64,000 bases of DNA from Marsupella aquatica. Its lineage: Eukaryota; Plantae; Marchantiophyta. Where the stretch lies: the NCBI GenBank assembly GCA_973895155.1, contig OZ316898.1:10622286-10686285 (forward strand), written 5' to 3'. The notes beneath the pieces are model-generated. The model was not told the origin of the DNA. It worked only from the letters and a program-made list of their open reading frames with translations, and did no database searches. The stretch's first letter is position 1. Each line of letters opens with the position of its first letter. Below are positions 2,985 to 40,426 of this stretch, one piece after another. A program made the position numbers and the translations under genes.

Positions 2985-5879
2985 TCAAAAATTGACGCCT
3001 TTTTTGGCCCTTCGTTCAGCTTCCCTTTCAATCAATTTGAGATTAAATTCACCAGATATTATGTCCTTAATATCTGTGCCTGAAGTCAAGCTCGCCTCAT
3101 ATGCATCAATGATCGAATCAGGATAAATCATAACCCCAACAGCGCCCAATGCACGCACAACATTGGCAAGTCTACATATTCTCTGCCTTATTTCTAAAGA
3201 CACTTCAAAGCTCTGGTTCTCTAATTTTTCTGCATCTAAGTCCGCAACTCTTATCTGTTCACTGGCAGCAGCATCAGGATTGGACGGAGGAAGACCAGAT
3301 ACCCAGACGTATCCATTACAGCCTATAATCATTTGTACCCCATATTGCTTTAGCTGGTGAAAATGTTGCTTTAACCTCTTGATCAGATACGGGGCAACTT
3401 TCACCAGCTGTCCATTCTCCAACTGCGGCGCAATGAGATACAAACAGAGACGAAAGCTGAGGAACTAATGACGAGCTTCAGTGATGTGTTATCGCCCACA
3501 ATAACAATAACAATGGCAACGACAAAGAACTAACAGAGGGGAAAAATGTGAAATCGTTCCTGCGATTATCACTTTGACTCTACGAATAAGCAAGATTTAA
3601 TTTTAAAAAATAAATCGGCCCAATGATTTGGTCTTTCATCACCTAGAAAAATATAAAAGAGCAACATAAATGACGGACACCAGGACAGACGGGTTGTTTG
3701 CAGCAATGGCTTCATATCCATGTAAGAAGAAAATCCTTTTCGCTTCCCTATACTAGTCGAACACCACATCTAAGGCAAGGTCAAGCGTGTGGGGTACTTC
3801 CGGATTTACCTTGCCATACTTCAGGCTTCGGGTATGTAGATGAAGAGAACCGTCATGATGAAGCGTCTGCACTTCGGCCTAAAAGAGCCACAGAAAGGGC
3901 AACATCGGCAACTATTCAGGGCCCCCACGAATCAAAACTTCTCAAAGACACTCAAAACAAAGCGACAGGTGAATCAATGACAAAGAACCGTAATATTTCA
4001 AACCACCGGTGTCGAAGGATAATGCAGGATTTCACAAAATATAAACGACGAGCATCTGAGATAACTATTGACCACATACGAAAGGTAATCTCAAATTCAA
4101 ACAAGTGCCAGAAACCGGATATCATTGCGGGAGAAATAGCTCCGCTGAGGATAAAATCCATGAAAACAATGAGAAATTTAAAGGCTCACCCTTGAAGGGA
4201 CAGATTACATTGAGGGTCAAAAGAGGTATGAGAACTTACGCTGCTAATAACTCCGAAGACTATACAAAATAGGACAGTCAACAACGAAAATTACAGAATT
4301 GTACCGACGTAAATATTCATTGAGAATCCTAGTACGAACTTCTCATCAAAGGCATCTAGGCTCCACCCTTCACTCGTCATATCTCTAGCAGTATAAACAG
4401 ACTCGTTAACGCTGAGGTCATCATGCGGGTCATATAACAAAGATATTAGAAGTAAGGCACCACAAACTCGTGTGAATGTCCAGGAAAAACTCACACTAAT
4501 CAGATCATGTTCTGTGAAAAGATCCCGCATGTTCAACTCATCGACCGAAGTCCGCCGCCTCTGCCAAGTGCCGACCAAAGTTCAGGACCAAAAAATGAAA
4601 GTCCTCTTGAAGTACCATGGTTGAAATATGATGAGCTCGACAAACTAGAAAGTAAAGAGACCAACCTGGATGCCACCTGGAAGATTGACAGAGGAAAGCA
4701 TCAATTGTGCATCTTGTCTCGAGTTCACATCCAACTTCCACCTCTTGGGTGCAACCTACAAGTAAAGACAAAGCGCAAAGCGCAATTTAGTCATTGGACT
4801 GCCTTATAGGTCATGCAAATTACTCGTGAGGCTAAGGTTTCAGATGATGCTGTAAACCCATTTTAATGTTCTACGCTGTCTGTGAACCCTGCATTCGCGA
4901 TCAAAAGCATACCTCTGTCACACGACCTACGACCACGTCTCCAGTTTCAGGAGTGTACCTACACAAGGTACGCGTACATCAACCCATCAACGACAAGAAG
5001 TGAAGCAAACATCATTCGCTCATCACGAGAGAGAACAAAAGAAGTCTATCATCCCATTCACAGAGGAGGACATGATGACTAAAAGGTGAGTCGCCACAGG
5101 AGCACTCCTCAATCTGTCAACACTCAAGTTTCAGGTGAATTTGCAGGAAGTAAATATGAAAAATGCCTGCGGCGAGATTCTTAGATTCTTAAACAGAAAG
5201 GAAAAGTTAGACCCAGCGGAGTCCAGTTCAGAGCGCCAATGATTACTTGCTGGGAGAAATCCCAGAAAAGCACGGCGACTTAGGCATACTGCCACCACCA
5301 CGGACTTAGGGTTTAATAAAACACTACACATTATGAGCATTCCATCTGTCAGGACTTAATATTCCAGGTAAACTTCAGGGGGAATAAAGTTGAGAATTGT
5401 GATCGACCTTTGTACCTCTAAAAGGATATATATACTTCGGAACCCATTAATTGATTCCATGGTAAATCTGCGATTAGGGCTCAAAGTTTAAGCAAGGGTA
5501 TAAGGTTTAAGCGAACCTGGCTCGAAGAGGGCGCACAGACACGAGCTTGTTGACCCGTTCGATCACCCCACAGACAGTTGCAACGAGCTTCCCGTCTACT
5601 AGCTGAGTCCCATGACCCCTGCACGCATCATTACCAAAATTCAAAAAACTCCTCGATGACGGCACCTTCAGCTCCCGCTCGCGAATGCAAGAAACACTCG
5701 AGAGTTTAAAGAAATCTGATTGACCTCAAAAAGCCGCTCTCGTAGTCCACAGGAATCGTGTCGCCTACATTCACCAACGCCGACGAGGGAACACTTCCCG
5801 CCAGGTCTGCAAACCGCTGCTGCGCGTCTGAGAGGCGTCGCCTCTGCGAATCGGACAGTTGGAAGCGCACTCCACGCAT
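2985..5879 (-). CDS. RRP4: Exosome complex RNA-binding subunit RRP4 (EXOSC2), ~321 aa. Exons: 5879-5725, 5618-5517, 4958-4913, 4755-4666, 4560-4495, 3878-3810, 3422-2985
   Basis: All six introns are GT-AG and the joined CDS (966 nt) stays in frame. The translation has RRP4 motifs: GFLRGHGT..LVATVCGVIERVNKLVSVRPLRARY, GDVVVGRVTEVAPKRWKLD, RRRTSVDELNMR, HDGSLHLHTRSLKYGKL and IIGCNGYVWV. An alternative in-frame ATG lies at 5891. Confidence 0.96.
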
Positions 5880-10452: not shown

Positions 10453-13044
10453 TTATTTTGTGATCTCCATCCCCCACCTTTCTGTTTGTGGCAACATTTT
10501 CTCTAATTTGGTACATTCTATATCCCCTTCTCGCTGTATCAAACCCTCGACCACTTGGCTTGCAGGCTGCAACATCACGCTATGTAAATAACCATCTGGC
10601 AATACCTTTGTTGCTCCGTTGGACTCCACAGCAGTGGACAAGATCCAACCCACTAACCACGATAGTTGTGTCTCATTCTCCAAGTACCCTTCAGTAAAGA
10701 GCTTGACAAACCTGTCGTGAAGGATGTCGTTAATCTCACGAAGCAGCTGAATACAGCGCATGTGCAGACTGACGTAATCGAATCGGATCATGTGCTGCTC
10801 AGCAACCAGGGCTGTCCTTAGCGCAAAGAGGAATTGCAGCGGTCCTAACTTATGTGTCTGAGCATACACCTGTTGCAGCTTTGTCTGGGGCCTATACAGT
10901 TGCAAAGAGGAAGGATCCACTCCATAATCCCCCAGGAGATCTTCCATCGTCTCCCCTGTCAACACCACTCCCCCACGCACAACGTCCTCACGGAACATTG
11001 CCGAAACTGGAGATTTCTCCTTCAAAAACGACGGCCCATTTGGTGACAGCCTCGGTTTTTCTCTCACGTACTTCTTCTTGGTGGCACGGAAGTTAGAAGC
11101 AAAATAAGAGGTTGATACCCCGGCCATCAAACAAAGGCTCTTGAACGACTCCGTCACAGTCTGAGGAATGCGGCCTCTAAACATCCGCTCTTTATCATGC
11201 ACTTTCATGACCCACTCCATATCTTTCCACGAGTCCTGCCCCAAAAACCCTGCATGTTTACAAGCCTCATACAGATGACTCACAAAGAGAATTGTCCCCC
11301 AGGCAGTGGCTAGCGTCAATCCCAAATCCTGAAAAATGAGCTGCAGGCGGAATTGCAACATGCCACAAAAGAGGGGATGGCGCGTGAGGAGGTAATAGGC
11401 TTCGGCCTTAACATGAGGCAACAAACGATTCACCACCGGCCGCTTGATATTACCAAGATAGTCTTTCAGTACCCACTCGTTGATGAAGCTGTTGAGCATC
11501 TCCACAACTCTTTCATTGGAGGCAGGCCAATTCATAAAGGGTACTTTGGGATTATGTCGAGCACGATATTTTAAGCTTGTGCCCATCAGAACTCCGGCGG
11601 AGCGAAGGTCTTCAAATCCCCGGGACACCTGTTCTCGCAGGACATGGTGGATGTCCAAATAGACTTGGACAGCAAATACGAGAAGGAGCGAGATTTCCCT
11701 GTCACACACCATTTTCTGCAGCTCCTTGGAGAGTTCATCCTGTACAGGACGATTGGCTCCGAGTCGCGCAAGCGAGACGAAGTCGGGTAACATCTCAGCC
11801 AGGATGATCCGATCTTCCAGTTCTTTTTGCGCAGTTGACAATGAGTCCCTAGACTGGCGGGGGTTGTAAATGCCAAAATGGCCAGGCTGGTACACCGGAA
11901 GGATATTCGGCTGCACCACTTGAAGCAGTGACATAAGGAACGAGTAAATTTGAATGTAAATAAAGTCCCCAACCTGCTTACGCTTCGGTATGCGGAGAAA
12001 ATCTTCATCAAAATCCACCTCAATCGAGATCTCCCCCGTGGAATGGTCAACTGTCCGGTGCATGCTTCCTGCAACGCACAGGACTATGGCAATTTTCTTG
12101 TAATTGTCGAATTCGGGGCTAAGGGCTAAGAGGTCGTCCTGCTTGCTGCGAATGATGTGGAATGCCATGTTTGTTGTGACCGACGCCGTGATGAGATCGA
12201 TTTTCCTGTCTCTGTAGTCTGACCATGTGTCACGCAGGGAGTCCCGAATTAAATGCAAGTCTGAGAAGAAACAGAACAGAGCCAGCAAGTCATCCTCGTA
12301 GGATGATTCTTCTTCCATAACGTAGTAGACCTCCACTTGACCACCTCTCGATGTGGTGCCGGTGGTCGAGATAGCGCTCGAGGGAGTGGGGACTTCTTCT
12401 GGTGGTGGTAATGCCTGGGAATGATCCTGATCCTTTGCTTCTTCTACATCCAGAAGGGAGAAGGGGTTAGCAAGGGCTTCTCCTTGGGGAACAAGGCTGG
12501 GGGTTTGAGCTGTGCTCGCAGACTTGGTAGTGGTTGCATCTCGCACACAGAAGGGGTCCAGAATCTGAACTACTTCCTCCAACACGGTGATGAAGTGCTG
12601 ATGCGATTTGCCACGGATGCCTTCTTCATCCTCAGTTGGTTGTTGATTGAACCACGCTGCGCAGCGCTTTCGAATGGCGATGGCCCTCCGGGCAAAGTTC
12701 AACACGAAGCCGGGCACCTTGATGCGGTTGGTGCTGCTGGCAATAAATTGGGCAATCTTGGTGAAGTCTTTGACGAAGACTGGTCTACGCGTCACTGAAG
12801 AAGCCGCTGGTGCTTTAGTGGCAGCCCCTTTCGTAGCTTGCTGCTTCCTTGCTTTCCCTTTAGCCCTCCCGTTCCTTGGAGGAGGTTTCGTTCGTGTTGA
12901 GTCGGCTTCAGCGGTGGGGAGTGGCTGAAAATCCAACTCATATCCCAATCCTTTGGCCGTGCCAACCAGCCATGATGTGAACTGATTCGTATCCGCCTTG
13001 TACTGCTTGTGGCTATCGTAAATAAACTCTGGGAGTTTCGGCAT
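10453..13044 (-). CDS. Intronless DUF6604-family protein (fungal-type), 863 aa from the ATG at 13044
   Basis: Uninterrupted 2.6-kb ORF. The N-terminus has the DUF6604 pattern: YDSHKQYKADTNQFTSWL, the basic GRAKGKARKQ linker, RRAIAIRKRCAAWF, HQHFITVLEEV, NPFSLLDVEE and FCFFSDLHLIRDSLRDTWSDY. Family-typical C-terminal blocks follow (HPLFCG, WGTILFVSHLYEA, WKDME). The ORF-track start at 13161 is a TTG, so the first ATG is used. Confidence 0.85.
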   Translation of the reverse strand: MPKLPEFIYDSHKQYKADTNQFTSWLVGTAKGLGYELDFQPLPTAEADSTRTKPPPRNGRAKGKARKQQATKGAATKAPAASSVTRRPVFVKDFTKIAQFIASSTNRIKVPGFVLNFARRAIAIRKRCAAWFNQQPTEDEEGIRGKSHQHFITVLEEVVQILDPFCVRDATTTKSASTAQTPSLVPQGEALANPFSLLDVEEAKDQDHSQALPPPEEVPTPSSAISTTGTTSRGGQVEVYYVMEEESSYEDDLLALFCFFSDLHLIRDSLRDTWSDYRDRKIDLITASVTTNMAFHIIRSKQDDLLALSPEFDNYKKIAIVLCVAGSMHRTVDHSTGEISIEVDFDEDFLRIPKRKQVGDFIYIQIYSFLMSLLQVVQPNILPVYQPGHFGIYNPRQSRDSLSTAQKELEDRIILAEMLPDFVSLARLGANRPVQDELSKELQKMVCDREISLLLVFAVQVYLDIHHVLREQVSRGFEDLRSAGVLMGTSLKYRARHNPKVPFMNWPASNERVVEMLNSFINEWVLKDYLGNIKRPVVNRLLPHVKAEAYYLLTRHPLFCGMLQFRLQLIFQDLGLTLATAWGTILFVSHLYEACKHAGFLGQDSWKDMEWVMKVHDKERMFRGRIPQTVTESFKSLCLMAGVSTSYFASNFRATKKKYVREKPRLSPNGPSFLKEKSPVSAMFREDVVRGGVVLTGETMEDLLGDYGVDPSSLQLYRPQTKLQQVYAQTHKLGPLQFLFALRTALVAEQHMIRFDYVSLHMRCIQLLREINDILHDRFVKLFTEGYLENETQLSWLVGWILSTAVESNGATKVLPDGYLHSVMLQPASQVVEGLIQREGDIECTKLEKMLPQTERWGMEITK

Positions 13045-13747
13045 TGCGACTGGGGTGAGATTTTCTGCTAAGGTGGTGAGGAAACTGATGAGATATTTGA
13101 ACCCGGAACAGTACGAGCCAACGGATGTTGCTGTACTTGTGAGGCAATTTCTTCGCTTCAATCAGGTCCGAGTGATCACAAGTGCTGCTCGAAAGAATTC
13201 AGGGCTTCAGAACCACATGCCATCCTCTCTCCATCATTGAAGTATGCAGAGCCTCTAATTCTACCACCGTCCCAGCGACGAAATGTGACAAAACAACCTA
13301 CTTGTTATCGCCCAAACAGCTCCGCTGCCATTCTCCTTGAAAGGTTGTGACCTGAAAGAAAGGAGATAGACAAGGGTTTTACCTCTTCAACAATCCCAGA
13401 TACACGGAAGTAATACCAAAGGGAGAAGGAAATTGTGCGAATACACATATTGATAACCAACAATTGACATCGTCAACAGCAAGTTTGCGCTTCCCAAGCA
13501 TGCAAGTAAGTAGAATCTCGAGCCGCGGTAATTGAGAATGCAGTTAAACAGTCCAGGGTTTAGGATAACCACTTGACGTACTCGTGAACATGAAGTGCAG
13601 GTTCGATGCTAGTACTGCTTCAACGCGCTTAGAAGTCAGTCCGAGAGCATCTTAGGAATCCGATCGCCGAAGTACACCTCCTTACGATGAATTTGGATAA
13701 TGGACGACGCAGTAGACACAACGCCGAACGTTTCTCTTCAGCTAGTC

Positions 13748-21743: not shown

Positions 21744-23437
21744 ATGGCAACCATGGCTATGACGGTGTGCAGAGCTGCGTTCCTCGCTCTAGCTATTGCC
21801 ACTCTATGCTCCCTGCCTGCCTTCGCCAAGGTCTGCCTCTGCCTCTCTCGTTTCTGCTGCTACCAATTTCTTCGTGTAGTTTGTGTTTGTTTGGATCCTG
21901 TCATTCCTTTCCCGTTTCTGTCTGGATGTTTAACGAGATTCGATTATCGTTTGTCACTGACTCAGTTGCAACCGTGTTACGCATCTCTCAGAAGACTGGC
22001 GGGATGTGTTTGGGTCGCTGTTCTGTTCAGTAAAGTCGATTTGTTGTGCTCTGTCCCTGGTCTTGTTGGAACGCATGCGATTTAGGACCTTGAGATGTCG
22101 CGAGAAGTGCCTCTTCAACGTAATTGAGCACAGCGGAATGAGCCTTGTTGAGGTGTGGTGCATAGCCGATGAATACGGAAAAGTAGGCGTAAAAACTGGA
22201 ATTGCCTCCATGCTCTGCGCCGTAGCAATCAGATTTTGATGATCGATGAATCGATTTGAAGCGTCATCTACAGGCTTTGAGCTTCAGCTTCAGCTTCGGC
22301 TCCCGATGCGTTCGAGCGCTACAAGCTTCGAGCACCAGATCCCGATGTCTTAGGACCGGAAGCTTTGAGCCTAATGCATCAGGCTTTTGTTGTTTATATC
22401 CTCTTCACTTGATCTCAAGCCTCGGTAAAGTCCTTCCGCTTTCTCTGGACTGATGATCGTTACGTCTCCCGAACGGAGGGAATGCATTTCATGCACTCCT
22501 CAATGCACCGGTGATGACTGAAGAGAATGCATAACATGAGCAGCTTTCTGTTGCGGAGATCACCAACAGTGCGTCCGAGCCCGCAGTCATGCGATCGATT
22601 GGCTAAGGCGCACGTGCAGTCACAATCGTAATGTCTGCCATGTGCTTTGAGAATTTGTAATCATGATTATGTTCTTTCTACATTTCGTCAAGTGTTAATC
22701 GACAGCACGAAGCCGAAGGTCCGGATGTTTACAGTACCGGCTTTGAAATCGTTGAAGCATGCGTACTCGTCGGAACGTAGAGGGGGACTTAGAGCTCAGG
22801 TTGCGAAGTTTGTACTGGCTCCATCACTTGATCGTAACACAATTCTTTTTAGTTTGACTGCCACCGAAAAGATCGCCTTGCTGGCCAATTCAATTCACAG
22901 CCTCGAAACTGTCAGCTGGAAGTTGGGAGTCGTGTGTAACGATTGTGTGGCAATTTTCCGTTTGCGCAGACCTCAGATTGCGTGTACAATGTGTACGTGC
23001 GAACCGGCAGCATATGGGGGTCAGGAACGGATTCAACCATCACCGTGGAGTTCTATGACGCAGATTACAACGCCATCTTGATCACCAACCTGACCGGGTG
23101 GGGAGGCAACCTGCAAGGCCAGGACAGAGACTACTTCGAGGCAGGCAATACCGACATTTTCAGCGGACTGGGCGATTGTCTCGAGAACCCCATTTGCGGG
23201 ATAACTCTGACGTCGGACGGATCGGGCGATCATCATGGCTGGAACGTGGACTATGTGCAGGTGACCTTCACTGGCCCCCACTTGCCTTGCTATCAGAAGG
23301 AGTTCGATGTGAGTCGATGGATCGCAACCGACCAATATCCGTTCTCTCTGGTTTACGATAGTGATGGATGCGACGTCCAGAGCAAGAAGGGTAGCAAACA
23401 GCGTGGCAATCACCATAATCAGCTAGGTAGATTATGA
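21744..23437 (+). CDS. Secreted single PLAT/LH2-domain protein (plant PLAT1/PLAT2-like), 184 aa. Exons: 21744-21830, 22970-23437
   Basis: Exon 1 encodes a signal peptide (MATMAMTVCRAAFLALAIATLCSLPAFAK) and is followed by a GT-AG intron. Exon 2 reads DCVYNVYVRTGSIWGSGTDS...DYFEAGNTDIFSGLGDCL..PIC.ITLTSDGSGDHHGWNVDYVQVT..GPH.PC, the classic plant PLAT consensus. Confidence 0.95.
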
Positions 23438-37173: not shown

Positions 37174-40100
37174 ATGGGAGAAACCGCCGACCCGAGGGTC
37201 TTTCAGTTGGTGAAAGACCTCTGCGCCAGTTTCCCTACCTCGTCCAAAGAAGCGCCGGAAGATTACCGGTGTTGTCAGATGGTCAATGAGTTGGAGATGG
37301 ACTCTTCTATATCGTACGACAAAGTTTTGGCAGAGCTCTTCGACATGGGATACGAGATTGAGCTCGCAAGCAGAGCAATATTGGACTGTGGTAATTCTGC
37401 ACTCACTGCCACGCTGCGATGAATTTTGACAGCAGAATCTGAGTCGCCAATTTGCATTTGAATCGATTTCTGTATTGAACCATGTAATGTTTTGCCGACA
37501 CTTGCTGAGCTTATATTTCATTTGACAGCAGAGTATGACTTTCATTTGTTTCTTGTGGTTGTTTGGAGTACTACTCACATTTCTTGAACGTGTAGGACGG
37601 TTGGACGTGACTGCAATCATCGAGCATATGAATTCAGAAGCTCCCGCTTCTGTGGCCATCGTAAGAACATAATCGCATCTTAGTTCGGACATTCGCCATT
37701 TATAGTGCCGAACGAGATGCAAGACTTGAATGAAAGTTGTGAACTAGGCTTTCCCTGATGTCCCTGATGTTGATGTTGATATGTAAATAATTGAAGTCTG
37801 TAGGGAGAGAGTTCTCAAGCTCCTTGTGTCATAACCTTCAGACCCTCATATCTTCGCTTGTGGTTGTACTTGCAGGTTTCACCAGTCATGCCGTCGAATT
37901 ACGAAGTCAAAGCACCGTCTTCGGATACGACTGTAAAACGAGTGCAAGAAGAGCAGCAGGTTTCTAGTTTAGGGACGGGACCGACATACCGACTGCCGGC
38001 TCCATGTGAAGCCGGCACCAGCAAAATCCGTGTTGAAGATCAAGATGGCTGCGATGCAGACAGGTGGGAACATGATGACCCAACCGCGGACAAGGAGTCG
38101 CACTTGTTGACAATGGGTTTCCCTCCGCACCACGTGACTGCTGCCCTTGAAGCATGTGGTCTGTCATCTTAACCCCCTTAAGACTACGCGAGGATTTCTG
38201 TTGAGATTTCTGTTCGTCAGACTGCTTCTTCGCAAGCCTGTTTTGTGGAATGATGATATCGGTTTCTTTCCATATCACTACAAATTTTCACTTGATTTGT
38301 CCAGGAATTGATAGCAATGTCAACGACCTCGCTAACCACATTATTAACAATGTTGAGGATCTTCCGGAAAATAACTGGGTACGTAGCGAGGTGATTTGTT
38401 GCCCTCTTGATTTCTTATTTGGGACGAACTAGGTTGAGCCATAATCTCATCACGTGAATCCACGGTTTGTTGGTGCTCACAGGACGACGATGACATGGTA
38501 GATATGGTAGATCGAAAGTATGTCAAGAAGGAAGATTGCGAGGACTTGGCTGGTGAAGAATCGTTGGATCAGGTTCACTTAATTTTAAAGAAACTCCGAA
38601 GCATGGGATGCTCGTTTACAGCTAAGATGGTTGTTGAGGCTATCCAGGCTTGTGGTAGGTGCTCTTCTCCTTCCTATGCAGTTGCATGAATACACCTCGC
38701 ACGTAAAAGAAAATGAGCGAGTTACACCGATGAATATTGTATACGGCTAACCAAGGAAATTTTTTAACAGGTAAGGATGCCGAAGAGGATGCCCTCGTGG
38801 AATACCTTCTCATAACTGATGAAAGCACTCTGCGAGGTGAGAACAACGGTGAGGCACGGCATATGACCAAACTACAGCAGCTGAAGCGGTTGGGCTGTAC
38901 CTCAACCGCTGCATGTCTGCGAGCCATAGACAACAATGGTACATCCTAACCTCTTCGTTGCTAAACTATGGAACTACTCACTTCTGACGATTTTTTGAAC
39001 GTGATTCTGAAGCTGTAGATTGCATCTAACCTTGAGGGGTGATTTACGACTAACTGATTATCACATATTGCAGGTGATGCAGATATATTTGAGCTACTTG
39101 ATTACTATTGGGCCGATGAGTTCCAAGATCACGAGGTGAGGCTGACGCTCCTTTGCATGTTTTGTGTTTGAAAAAGATTTGCCACGAAATTTATGTGTTC
39201 TGTGCCCCTGATTGCTTGACCAGGGTGATGAGGATGGATACAATCGAGATGCTAAGATTACTTCGAAGAAGCGGAAAAGGAAGGAAATTGCAGTTTCCAC
39301 CAAATTGTTACTGAGGAAAGGAAAGAAGGTCGAGTGCTACGACGAAGACGAGCAGGAGGAGGAGAGCTGTCCTCGTTTCCATCGCAACATGACAGGGTTT
39401 GGACTGCCTGGAGAGCCTGTGATTCCAAGGGTGCTCAGCGAGGACATCTCCCGTCCTCCTTACTTCTACTTTGAAAATGTTGCTCTCACGCCGAAAGACG
39501 AATGGAATAATATCCAGAGACATCTGTACAACATTGCCCCCGAGTTTGTGGACTCTCTGAACTTTTCACCTTGCAGAAGGCCCAGAGGTTATGTTCATAA
39601 TCTTCCGGTGGAAGGGAGAGTGAATGTCCTTCCCAAACCGCCCATGACTGTACAGGAACTAATACCTGGTTCTGCAGGATTTTGGCCAGCCTGGGACACG
39701 AGAGTGAAGTTGAACACAATTAATACTAGAGCTGCCTCTGAATTTGTCCGAAGGCAAATACAGGACAATATCATTGCCGTGGAGAACGGAGTGCCCTCAT
39801 GTAAAGACATAAAATCCATTATGTTTTGGGCAAAGAAGTGGAATTTGGTGTGGATAAGGCCTGGAGTGTTGGCTCCTCTCTCTCCTGAAGACATAGAGAG
39901 ATGCTTAGGGTTTGATATCGATCACACCCGTGTACTTTATTCCCCTACAGATCGGGTCAGAGTTCTTGGAAACAGTTTTCAGGTTAACACAGTGGCCTAT
40001 CATCTATCAGTACTCCGGCCAATGTATACAAGTGGTATAAGGGTGTTGTCCCTCTTTTCTGGTATAGGAGGAGCTGAAGTGGCACTGCATAAGCTGGGCA

Positions 40101-40426
40101 TTTTCCTGAAATTGGTAGTAAGTGTTGAGATCGATGATAAGGCTAGGATGGTGGTAGACAGCTGGTGGAAGACCACCAATCAGAAAGGTAGACTGATCCA
40201 TAGCTTCACGGATGTGAGAGAAGTCGATTCTAGAAGAATTCAGGGTCTGGTGGATGAGTTCGGGGGTTTTGATCTTGTAATTGGTGGTAGTCCCTGTAAT
40301 AATTTGTCCGGAAACAATCGGTGCACCCGCACAGGACTAGCAGGGCCAGCATCTGTGACCTTTTTTGAGTTCCCCCGGATCCTAGCGGAAGTTAGAGATT
40401 ATATGAGACAGAAGGGAAGAGGATAG
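37174..40426 (+). CDS. DRM: Domains-rearranged DNA (cytosine-5) methyltransferase, ~747 aa. Exons: 37174-37390, 37596-37660, 37876-38158, 38305-38378, 38483-38654, 38771-38938, 39074-39135, 39224-40426
   Basis: All introns are GT-AG with consistent phases (2244 nt). Motifs appear in permuted order: VI (YFYFENV), VIII (RPRGYVHNLP), X (LGNSFQV), then I (VLSLFSGIGGAEVAL) and IV (DLVIGGSPCNNL, catalytic Cys intact). N-terminal UBA-like repeats are present. The exon 4 donor could be 38390 instead. A probable 5'UTR intron spans 36955-37141. Confidence 0.95.

What the first reader, a model, noticed from the sequence alone, without database searches (positions are those of the whole stretch)
39685..39745. 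DRM methyltransferase naturally carries Arg at the Arabidopsis DRM2 C397 specificity position, in a DNMT3-like TINTR loop
Seen: the target-recognition region reads WPAWDTRVKLNTINTRAAS, with the Arg codon AGA at 39728-39730. Recalled knowledge: Arabidopsis DRM2 reads WPEWDKRTKLNCILTCTGS, and a gapless alignment puts this Arg on C397. The engineered C397R substitution was reported to add a contact to the +2 guanine and shift DRM2 from CHH toward CHG. The loop also resembles the DNMT3A TRD loop KVRTITTRSNS, whose Arg reads guanine. The catalytic PC and the arginine finger (SPCNNLSGNNR) are intact. Inference: this may be a natural CHG- or CG-biased de novo DRM, or an ancestral DNMT3-like recognition loop kept in a permuted enzyme.
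Basis: partly seen in the sequence, partly recalled or inferred. Interest (0 to 1): 0.8.

Follow-up and report, generated by a model that had tools for sequence, protein, structure and literature searches.

The report
Liverwort DRM methyltransferase with natural guanine-reading arginine
An intact liverwort gene for a DRM-type de novo DNA methyltransferase naturally carries arginine at the position where an engineered arginine redirects the Arabidopsis enzyme from CHH to CHG sites, and a basic residue there proves common in algae and non-seed plants, against a published claim that the residue is always small.

Summary
Window 39683-39739 (+) encodes the stated loop, and the Arg codon AGA lies at 39728-39730. 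An ungapped alignment puts this Arg on residue 397 of the solved Arabidopsis DRM2 C397R mutant (PDB 7L4N).

The gene looks like an intact eight-exon DRM of about 747 codons. It has four UBA-like modules and a complete permuted methyltransferase domain on one exon. The catalytic Cys and the intercalating Arg finger are present.

The Arg is not peculiar to this gene. R or K occupies the site in Chara, Klebsormidium, all four Riccia co-orthologues, Sphagnum, Diphasiastrum, one Selaginella paralogue, Psilotum and one Adiantum paralogue. Seed-plant DRM1/2 enzymes almost always carry C, A, S, V or G, with rare Papaver and Daucus exceptions. The basic, DNMT3-like state (DNMT3A R836, DNMT3B K777) therefore looks old, and the small residue looks derived. 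This contradicts the published statement that DRM2 proteins "universally" carry a small residue.

A shift in specificity toward a guanine at +2 (CHG) is plausible but untested. It would fit the reported strand-asymmetric, RdDM-like CHG methylation in Marchantia. In the papers I could search, nobody had noted the natural Arg.

This is a known enzyme family with a new, testable natural variant class. Interest is moderate to high.

The parts
37174..40426 (+). Predicted DRM gene: eight exons, about 747 codons. There are four UBA-like modules, then a linker, then the permuted C5-MTase domain.
   Evidence: I read the exon model from the sequence. Every intron has GT-AG ends and the phases are consistent. 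No transcript evidence was available. The joined model was not built or searched.
37174..37390 (+). Exon 1: start codon and first UBA-like module, ending after the conserved Cys-Gly at a phase-1 intron.
   Evidence: Pfam UBA_7 E 6.8e-4, below the curated cut-off. Donor GT at 37391.
37596..37660 (+). Exon 2: third helix of UBA-like module 1.
   Evidence: Splice sites and phase read. Inference.
37876..38158 (+). Exon 3: linker plus UBA-like module 2.
   Evidence: Pfam UBA E 1.5e-3, below the cut-off. Splice sites.
38305..38378 (+). Exon 4: third helix of UBA-like module 2.
   Evidence: Splice sites and phase. Inference.
38483..38654 (+). Exon 5: acidic linker plus UBA-like module 3.
   Evidence: Splice sites and phase. 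No Pfam hit for this piece alone.
38771..38938 (+). Exon 6: third helix of module 3 plus UBA-like module 4.
   Evidence: Splice sites and phase. No Pfam hit for this piece alone.
39074..39135 (+). Exon 7: third helix of module 4.
   Evidence: Splice sites and phase. Inference.
39224..40426 (+). Exon 8: basic linker plus the whole permuted DRM methyltransferase domain (400 codons and the stop).
   Evidence: Pfam DNA_methylase E 1.5e-13 on residues 272-389 only, matching profile positions 1-100. The AF2 model matches DRM2 and NtDRM with TM 0.89-0.95.
39473..39481 (+). Motif VI (Glu-Asn-Val). It lies upstream of motif I, which is the mark of the domain rearrangement.
39683..39739 (+). Target-recognition loop at the start of the LHH motif. 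It is equivalent to AtDRM2 residues 382-400.
   Evidence: Ungapped alignment to 7L4N and 4ONJ.
39728..39730 (+). Arg codon AGA at the AtDRM2 C397 / DNMT3A R836 position. It is residue 169 of exon 8, about residue 516 of the gene model.
40055..40072 (+). Motif I (SAM-binding Phe-Ser-Gly-Ile-Gly-Gly).
   Evidence: Invariant in alignment A1.
40295..40297 (+). Catalytic Cys codon (motif IV Pro-Cys), equivalent to AtDRM2 C587.
40319..40321 (+). Arg-finger codon, equivalent to AtDRM2 R595, which intercalates into the non-target strand.

Best explanation
The locus is an intact liverwort DRM-type de novo cytosine-5 DNA methyltransferase. It belongs to the clade sister to the MpDRMb type. Like other DRMs it presumably acts in RNA-directed DNA methylation, flipping out the target cytosine and deforming the DNA with its conserved Arg finger. 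It differs from characterised seed-plant DRM2 enzymes in its target-recognition loop, which keeps a basic residue (Arg) where they carry a small one. This is a retained old state that is shared with streptophyte algae, many non-seed plants and animal DNMT3A/B. It is not a local novelty. By analogy with AtDRM2 C397R and DNMT3B K777, the guanidinium group most likely reaches into the major groove and hydrogen-bonds N7/O6 of a guanine two bases 3' of the target cytosine on the same strand. That would raise CHG (CNG) methylation relative to CHH, one strand at a time. Shown here: gene integrity, alignment register, fold, phylogenetic spread. Inferred: the guanine contact and the shift in specificity.
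For: Register and fold:
- The alignment to 7L4N, 7L4F and 4ONJ has no gaps across the loop. The C397R mutant scores slightly above wild type (356.8 versus 353.3 bits).
- The AF2 model superposes on DRM2-DNA complexes at TM 0.89 and rmsd 2.6 A over 345 columns.

DNA-contact residues named in PMC8172135, mapped by hand from the alignment:
- Conserved: N392, T396, S400, K433, K434, W435, S470, T472, G479-S481, C587, R595.
- Changed: C393T, A401E, Q402F, R406Q.

Published function:
- C397R lowers CHH and raises CHG activity in vitro and in vivo. R397 bonds N7 of the +2 guanine.
- DNMT3B K777, the equivalent of DNMT3A R836, bonds N7 of the G in a CAG complex and sets the preference for G there.

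Spread of R or K at the site (named):
- Algae: Chara, Klebsormidium.
- Liverworts: the window and 4 Riccia genes.
- Mosses: two Sphagnum paralogues.
- Lycophytes: two Diphasiastrum genes, Selaginella XP_024531159.
- Ferns: Psilotum, Adiantum 029241.

Tree and constraint:
- The window groups with Riccia at 100/99 support, and the seed-plant clade has 99/99.
- Arg codons are AGA in the window and AGG in Riccia, with saturated dS and dN of 0.27-0.30.

Circumstantial support: in Marchantia, CHG methylation is largely one-stranded, with CAG above CTG, and the authors attributed it to an RdDM-like pathway (10.1101/363937).
Against: - No biochemical or methylome data exist for any Arg- or Lys-bearing DRM in the literature I could search.
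- The residues flanking the Arg differ from the engineered Arabidopsis mutant (T for C393, N for L395, A-A for T398-G399). Three helix contacts have also changed, so the side chain may point elsewhere.
- Fang et al. found that larger side chains at 397 lower CHH activity, so natural enzymes may carry compensating changes that also alter read-out.
- The Marchantia CHG asymmetry could equally come from the CMT-like enzymes. I could not show that the window is from Marchantia.
- The gene model has no transcript support.
- A model-based ancestral-state inference was not possible. 'Ancestral' therefore rests on the distribution across the tree. The four named algae are not uniform (K, K, Q, D).
Confidence: 0.55

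Rival explanations
1. The Arg is an inherited but functionally quiet residue. In its native loop it contacts the phosphate backbone or adds general DNA affinity. The enzyme methylates all contexts with the usual DRM preference for CHH, so the change to small residues in seed plants only tuned the catalytic rate.
For: - Fang et al. describe the DRM2 TRD as working by shape complementarity, with single TRD mutations having modest effects.
- The site is variable outside seed plants and in DRM3: Q, N, D, E, V and C all occur.
- The next residue is often also basic (R-K or R-R in Sphagnum, Psilotum and Adiantum; V-R or G-R in ferns, Ceratodon and gymnosperms). That pattern fits a general electrostatic role.
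- P. patens drm mutants lose CHH at RdDM targets.
Against: - In AtDRM2 the single change to Arg was enough to shift specificity in vitro and genome-wide. His and Ala at the same position did not.
- The equivalent Lys or Arg in DNMT3B and DNMT3A is a proven base reader.
Confidence: 0.3
2. The Arg reads the guanine directly 3' of the target cytosine, as DNMT3A R836 does. The enzyme would then be a CG-leaning de novo methylase that overlaps in function with plant DNMT3.
For: - C397 and T396 are structurally equivalent to DNMT3A R836 and T835. R836 bonds O6 of the CpG guanine.
- The Thr-Arg pair is kept in the window.
Against: - The intercalating Arg finger (R595 equivalent) is conserved. Fang et al. 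report that the resulting DNA deformation limits CG methylation.
- In the C397R-CCG structure the Arg contacted the +2 guanine, not the +1 position.
- Liverworts keep separate DNMT3 genes according to the literature.
Confidence: 0.12
3. The feature is an artefact: a misaligned loop, a pseudogene, or a catalytically dead DRM3-like regulatory paralogue in which the residue has no bearing on specificity.
For: The deposited Riccia protein models lack motif IV. At first sight this suggested an inactive clade.
Against: - The Riccia genomic DNA encodes the full catalytic motif in one open frame, so the gaps are annotation errors.
- The window ORF is open for 400 codons with motifs I, IV and VI and the Arg finger intact.
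- The loop lies 15 ungapped residues after an invariant Trp-Pro-x-Trp-Asp anchor.
- The DRM3 clade is separate on the tree.
Confidence: 0.03

Closest known systems
Arabidopsis DRM2 and tobacco NtDRM (PDB 7L4C, 7L4F, 7L4H, 4ONJ)
   Same: Same permuted MTase fold (TM 0.89-0.95, about 50% identity). Same catalytic Cys, Arg finger and LHH motif length. N-terminal UBA-type modules are also present.
   Different: Residue 397 is Arg instead of Cys or Ala. There are four UBA-like modules. The whole MTase domain lies on one exon. Changes among the DNA-contact residues are C393T, A401E, Q402F and R406Q.
Engineered AtDRM2 C397R (PDB 7L4N; Fang et al. 2021, PMC8172135)
   Same: Arg at the identical alignment column, preceded by the same Thr. 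The mutant chain scores slightly above wild type against the window protein.
   Different: The mutant is a laboratory construct in an angiosperm background. The window carries a natural residue in a loop with different neighbours. Its effect on specificity has not been measured.
Mammalian DNMT3A (R836) and DNMT3B (K777) TRD loop
   Same: The Thr-Arg/Lys pair sits at the structurally equivalent place. The basic side chain reads a guanine in the major groove. The R/K alternation seen in DNMT3A/B recurs among non-seed DRMs.
   Different: DNMT3 is not permuted. It uses Val716 rather than an intercalating Arg, forms tetramers with DNMT3L, and has PWWP/ADD domains instead of UBA. Sequence similarity is detectable only over motifs I-IV (E about 1e-15).
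Marchantia MpDRMb and Calypogeia DRM (the other liverwort DRM clade)
   Same: Same family and similar length (MpDRMb is 758-765 aa). This clade is sister to the window-plus-Riccia clade at 94/87 support.
   Different: These enzymes carry Asn or Gln at the site instead of Arg. Liverworts therefore hold two DRM types that differ at the specificity position.
Angiosperm DRM3 (catalytically inactive paralogue)
   Same: Permuted fold. Some members keep the older Ile-Asn-Thr-Arg/Lys loop, for example Cucurbita DRM3.
   Different: DRM3 has lost the Pro-Cys motif and the Arg finger. The window gene has both.

Membership tests
DRM (domains rearranged methyltransferase) | Circular permutation: motifs VI-X precede motifs I-V | tested here: met
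   Glu-Asn-Val is at exon-8 residues 84-86. Motif I is at 278-283 and Pro-Cys at 357-358. The Pfam DNA_methylase hit covers only residues 272-389, matching profile positions 1-100.
DRM (domains rearranged methyltransferase) | Intact catalytic apparatus: motif I SAM site, motif IV Cys, motif VI Glu | tested here: met
   All three align to AtDRM2 and NtDRM. Motif I is invariant in alignment A1.
DRM (domains rearranged methyltransferase) | Intercalating Arg finger in the catalytic loop (AtDRM2 R595) | tested here: met
   The CGG codon at 40319-40321 aligns to chain index 326, which is R595.
DRM (domains rearranged methyltransferase) | N-terminal UBA domains | tested here: inconclusive
   Two exon pieces hit UBA or UBA_7 at E 7e-4 and 1.5e-3, below Pfam's cut-offs. 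Two further modules are recognised only by their pattern. Each module is split by an intron, and the joined model was not searched.
DRM (domains rearranged methyltransferase) | Three-dimensional fold of the DRM MTase domain | tested here: met
   The top eight Foldseek hits are DRM2 and NtDRM chains, with E 1e-35 to 2e-40 and TM by target 0.89-0.95.
DRM (domains rearranged methyltransferase) | Placement inside the streptophyte DRM clade | tested here: met
   Careful IQ-TREE run: the gene nests with the Riccia DRMs (100/99) inside the liverwort and land-plant DRMs.
DRM (domains rearranged methyltransferase) | siRNA-guided de novo methylation activity | not testable with these tools
   This needs enzyme assays or mutants with bisulfite sequencing.
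Guanine-reading (C397R-like) DRM variant | Arg at the AtDRM2 397 column | tested here: met
   Ungapped alignment to 7L4N. The offset was checked on three residues.
Guanine-reading (C397R-like) DRM variant | Hydrogen bond from the Arg to the +2 guanine, with a CHG-shifted preference | not testable with these tools
   No DNA-bound model or assay was possible. This rests on analogy.
DNMT3 proper | Canonical motif order I-X, with PWWP/ADD domains (animals) or DUF3444 (plants) | tested here: not met
   The motif order is permuted and the modules are UBA-like. PDB DNMT3 chains align only to motifs I-IV.
DRM3 (inactive paralogue) | Loss of the catalytic Pro-Cys motif and the Arg finger | tested here: not met
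   Both are present. The DRM3 clade is separate on the tree.

The most novel reading that the evidence does not exclude
The first DRMs read guanine, like DNMT3, and favoured CNG or CG sites. The strong CHH preference that now defines RNA-directed DNA methylation arose later, when the basic TRD residue was replaced by a small one on the seed-plant stem, and independently in Bryopsida-type mosses, one fern clade and one Selaginella paralogue. On this reading, liverwort DRMa-type enzymes such as this one still work in the old way and produce the strand-asymmetric CHG methylation reported in Marchantia. Lineages that keep one basic and one non-basic paralogue would have divided sequence contexts between them.
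Probability: 0.3. Interest if true: 0.78.

Novelty: new variant of a known kind. Interest (0 to 1): 0.62.

Why it matters
The only structural study of DRM substrate choice concluded that plants "universally" keep a small residue at C397. It treated this as an adaptation for CHH methylation, and treated Arg as an engineered curiosity.

The results here show that Arg or Lys is the common natural state in streptophyte algae and many non-seed plants. A one-residue laboratory trick becomes an evolutionary hypothesis: when and why RdDM became a CHH system. It also supplies ready-made natural test enzymes from liverworts, Sphagnum, lycophytes and ferns, some paired with non-basic paralogues in the same genome.

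The finding offers a concrete molecular candidate for the unexplained one-stranded CHG methylation of Marchantia. It also suggests natural scaffolds for context-selective methylation tools. If the Arg proves functionally silent, that is still informative, because it would show strong epistasis in the TRD.

Tried and rejected
- Translating the finding's exact coordinates gave an out-of-frame result with stops. The frame starts at 39683.
- A full-length MAFFT run on 121 proteins timed out. I replaced it with motif matching and pairwise mapping.
I did not try the same thing by any other route, so 'ancestral' rests on distribution and the offered change count: 12 changes between basic and non-basic over 68 tips.
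- The Sci Adv supplement with the authors' alignment is not held. Only the preprint's figure legend was readable.
- No self-hit appeared. The predicted protein (about 747 aa) exceeds 1.75 times the 400-aa query, so that blank means nothing.
- The idea that the Riccia clade is catalytically dead came from gaps in the deposited models. I rejected it after reading the genomic loci.
- dN/dS between window and Riccia could not be computed because dS is saturated.
- Searches of earlier scan notes for DRM or DNMT3 words gave nothing.
- I could not name the species. Earlier notes say probably liverwort, and the closest relatives are Riccia genes at 65-68% identity.
- I could not align plant or animal DNMT3 loops residue by residue myself. 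DRM chains fill the five alignments the PDB tool prints, and I did not type sequences from memory. The equivalence C397 = R836 = K777 is therefore taken from PMC8172135 and PMC7335073.
- The spliced gene model was not joined or searched as one protein. Exons were searched by reference only.
Full report
**1. Observation**

The + strand of window 39683-39739 encodes the quoted loop, and the Arg codon AGA is at 39728-39730. The finding's start coordinate lies two bases inside the Trp codon, so a literal translation of 39685-39745 is out of frame. The open frame 39224-40426 runs for 400 codons. It holds Glu-Asn-Val (motif VI) at residues 84-86, motif I at 278-283, the Pro-Cys catalytic pair at 357-358 and a conserved Arg at 366.

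**2. Register**

phmmer against all PDB chains gives:
- NtDRM 4ONJ at E 1.3e-108.
- The AtDRM2 C397R mutant 7L4N at 1.2e-105 (356.8 bits).
- Wild-type AtDRM2 chains at about 1e-104 (353.3 bits).

The alignment has no gap for the whole stretch from the invariant Trp-Pro-x-Trp-Asp anchor through the loop. Chain index 128 of 7L4N pairs with the window Arg. With an offset of 269 this is residue 397. The same offset correctly places C587 and R595. NtDRM shows Ala in that column, which matches what Fang et al. state (PMC8172135). An AlphaFold2 model built on a 25-sequence alignment (pLDDT 77.6, with only the first 59 linker residues disordered) superposes on DRM2-DNA complexes at TM 0.89 and rmsd 2.6 A, and on NtDRM at TM 0.92-0.95.

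**3. What the literature says**

Fang et al. report the following:
- It is structurally aligned with DNMT3A R836, and T396 with T835.
- C397R lowers CHH and raises CHG activity in vitro.
- R397 hydrogen-bonds N7 of the +2 guanine.
- In plants the mutant raises G at +2 from 18% to 52% of methylated sites.

[quoted passage not shown] Their figure legend says mosses, ferns, gymnosperms and angiosperms were sampled. Gao et al. (PMC7335073) show that DNMT3B K777, the counterpart of R836, bonds N7 of the G in a CAG complex and sets the preference for G at that place. Only three papers in the searchable library mention C397 with DRM2, and none of the passages I read notes a natural Arg.

**4. The gene**

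I read the exons from GT-AG boundaries and phase continuity. The model has eight exons:
- 37174-37390
- 37596-37660
- 37876-38158
- 38305-38378
- 38483-38654
- 38771-38938
- 39074-39135
- 39224-40426

That makes about 747 codons. There are four UBA-like modules. Each is interrupted by a phase-1 intron right after its conserved Cys-Gly. Two of the pieces give sub-threshold Pfam UBA hits. The whole methyltransferase domain sits on the last exon. The same is true of three Riccia sorocarpa genes.

I mapped the DNA-contact residues listed by Fang et al. by hand from the alignment. Conserved residues are N392, T396, S400, K433, K434, W435, S470, T472, G479-S481, C587 and R595. Changed residues are C393T, C397R, A401E, Q402F and R406Q, with two Arg residues just before the last of these.

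**5. Relatives and spread of the residue**

The word-based search found 1016 DRMs. A profile search of 1.84 billion cluster representatives added diverse lineages. I ran that second search because the novelty claim depends on who else has the residue. The site was read by motif and pairwise mapping and checked in alignment A1.

| Group | Residue at the C397 site |
|---|---|
| Streptophyte algae | Chara K, Klebsormidium K, Closterium Q, Chlorokybus D |
| Liverworts | window R; Riccia sorocarpa R, R, K; Riccia fluitans R; Marchantia MpDRMb N; Calypogeia Q |
| Mosses | Sphagnum R in two paralogues; Ceratodon V |
| Lycophytes | Diphasiastrum R and K; Selaginella R and C |
| Ferns | Psilotum R; Adiantum 029241 R; Adiantum 006276 V; Ceratopteris V |
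| Gymnosperms | V, G, S, E |
| Angiosperm DRM1/2 | C (most), A, S, V; isolated exceptions in divergent paralogues: Papaver K and R, Daucus N |
| Angiosperm DRM3 | variable, including R and K |

Many non-angiosperm enzymes without R or K at 397 have Arg at 398 instead (V-R, G-R, S-R, Q-R). Several with R have a second basic residue after it.

**6. Tree**

I ran a careful IQ-TREE analysis (LG+C20+F+G4) on 68 domains with the loop columns removed. It follows the species tree. The algae branch first. The window groups with the four Riccia genes at 100/99 support. This clade is sister to MpDRMb plus Calypogeia at 94/87, and seed plants form a clade at 99/99. Basic against non-basic needs at least 12 changes on this tree, so the site is labile. 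Small residues (C, A, S, V, G) are absent from the seven alga-grade sequences. Outside seed plants they are confined to Ceratodon, one fern clade and one Selaginella paralogue. The statement that a long polar, usually basic residue is the older state is an inference from this distribution.

**7. Constraint**

Synonymous sites between the window and Riccia are saturated, and dN is 0.27-0.30. Even so, the residue is Arg (AGA in the window, AGG in two Riccia genes) or Lys (AAG). The Riccia paralogues evolve at dN/dS 0.32-0.43.

**8. Mechanism**

- Shown: this is an intact DRM with every catalytic element, and it has an Arg on the DNA-facing TRD loop at the position proven to control the +2 read-out in AtDRM2 and DNMT3B.
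- Inferred: the Arg contacts a guanine at +2 on the target strand and raises CNG methylation relative to CHH.

Ikeda et al. (10.1101/363937) found that CHG methylation in Marchantia is largely confined to one strand, with CAG above CTG. They proposed a replication-independent RdDM-like pathway with DRM-like or CMT-like effectors. An Arg-bearing DRM would fit that, but the link is circumstantial, and I could not show that the window is from Marchantia.

Two alternatives remain open. The Arg may be functionally quiet in its native context, acting through electrostatics or masked by epistasis. Or it may read the +1 guanine as DNMT3A R836 does. The conserved Arg finger argues against the second, because Fang et al. 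tie it to poor CG methylation.

**9. Verdict**

The loop is best read as a retained DNMT3-like state, and it is widespread rather than unique. The specificity shift is plausible but untested. The gene family is known, and liverwort DRMs are annotated, for example MpDRMa and MpDRMb. What appears new is the recognition that a natural class of basic-residue DRMs exists, contrary to the published generalisation.

Noticed in passing
L001:8686-9735 (+); L002:11020-12069 (+); L002:3777-4925 (+): Three deposited Riccia sorocarpa DRM protein models (R1sor_002518, _014541, _014542) lack the catalytic motif IV region. The genomic DNA nevertheless encodes the full domain, including the Pro-Cys motif and the Arg finger, in one open frame. 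The models seem to contain spurious introns. Anyone using them would wrongly call these enzymes inactive.
   Followed up: yes
window 37174-39135: All four UBA-like modules of the DRM gene are split at the same place, by a phase-1 intron directly after the conserved Cys-Gly. This suggests tandem duplication of a two-exon UBA unit. Four modules is more than the three I recall for AtDRM2, which I did not check here.
   Followed up: partly
window 10453-13161 (-): An uninterrupted 902-codon ORF gives a full-length Pfam DUF6604 match (E 9e-68). From memory that family is mainly fungal, so this may be a horizontal transfer or a transposon-borne gene. An earlier first-reader note on this window says the same.
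   Followed up: partly
alignment A1, columns around the loop: Non-angiosperm DRMs that lack R or K at the C397 column very often carry Arg one residue later: V-R in ferns and Ceratodon, G-R or S-R in gymnosperms, Q-R in Calypogeia. Angiosperm DRM1/2 enzymes have a hydrophobic residue there. The basic character of the loop may have shifted by one position before it was lost.
   Followed up: partly
proteins P0179 and P0049 (Papaver), P0159 (Daucus): A few divergent angiosperm DRM2-like paralogues carry R, K or N at the site. At least one (P0179) lacks an alignable catalytic loop in the deposited model. These could be pseudogenes, mis-annotations or secondary reversions.
   Followed up: no
window 22943-23437 (+) and 2985-3443 (-): Exon-sized ORFs with PLAT/ATS3 and KH_6 domains, which look like ordinary plant genes flanking the region.
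   Followed up: no
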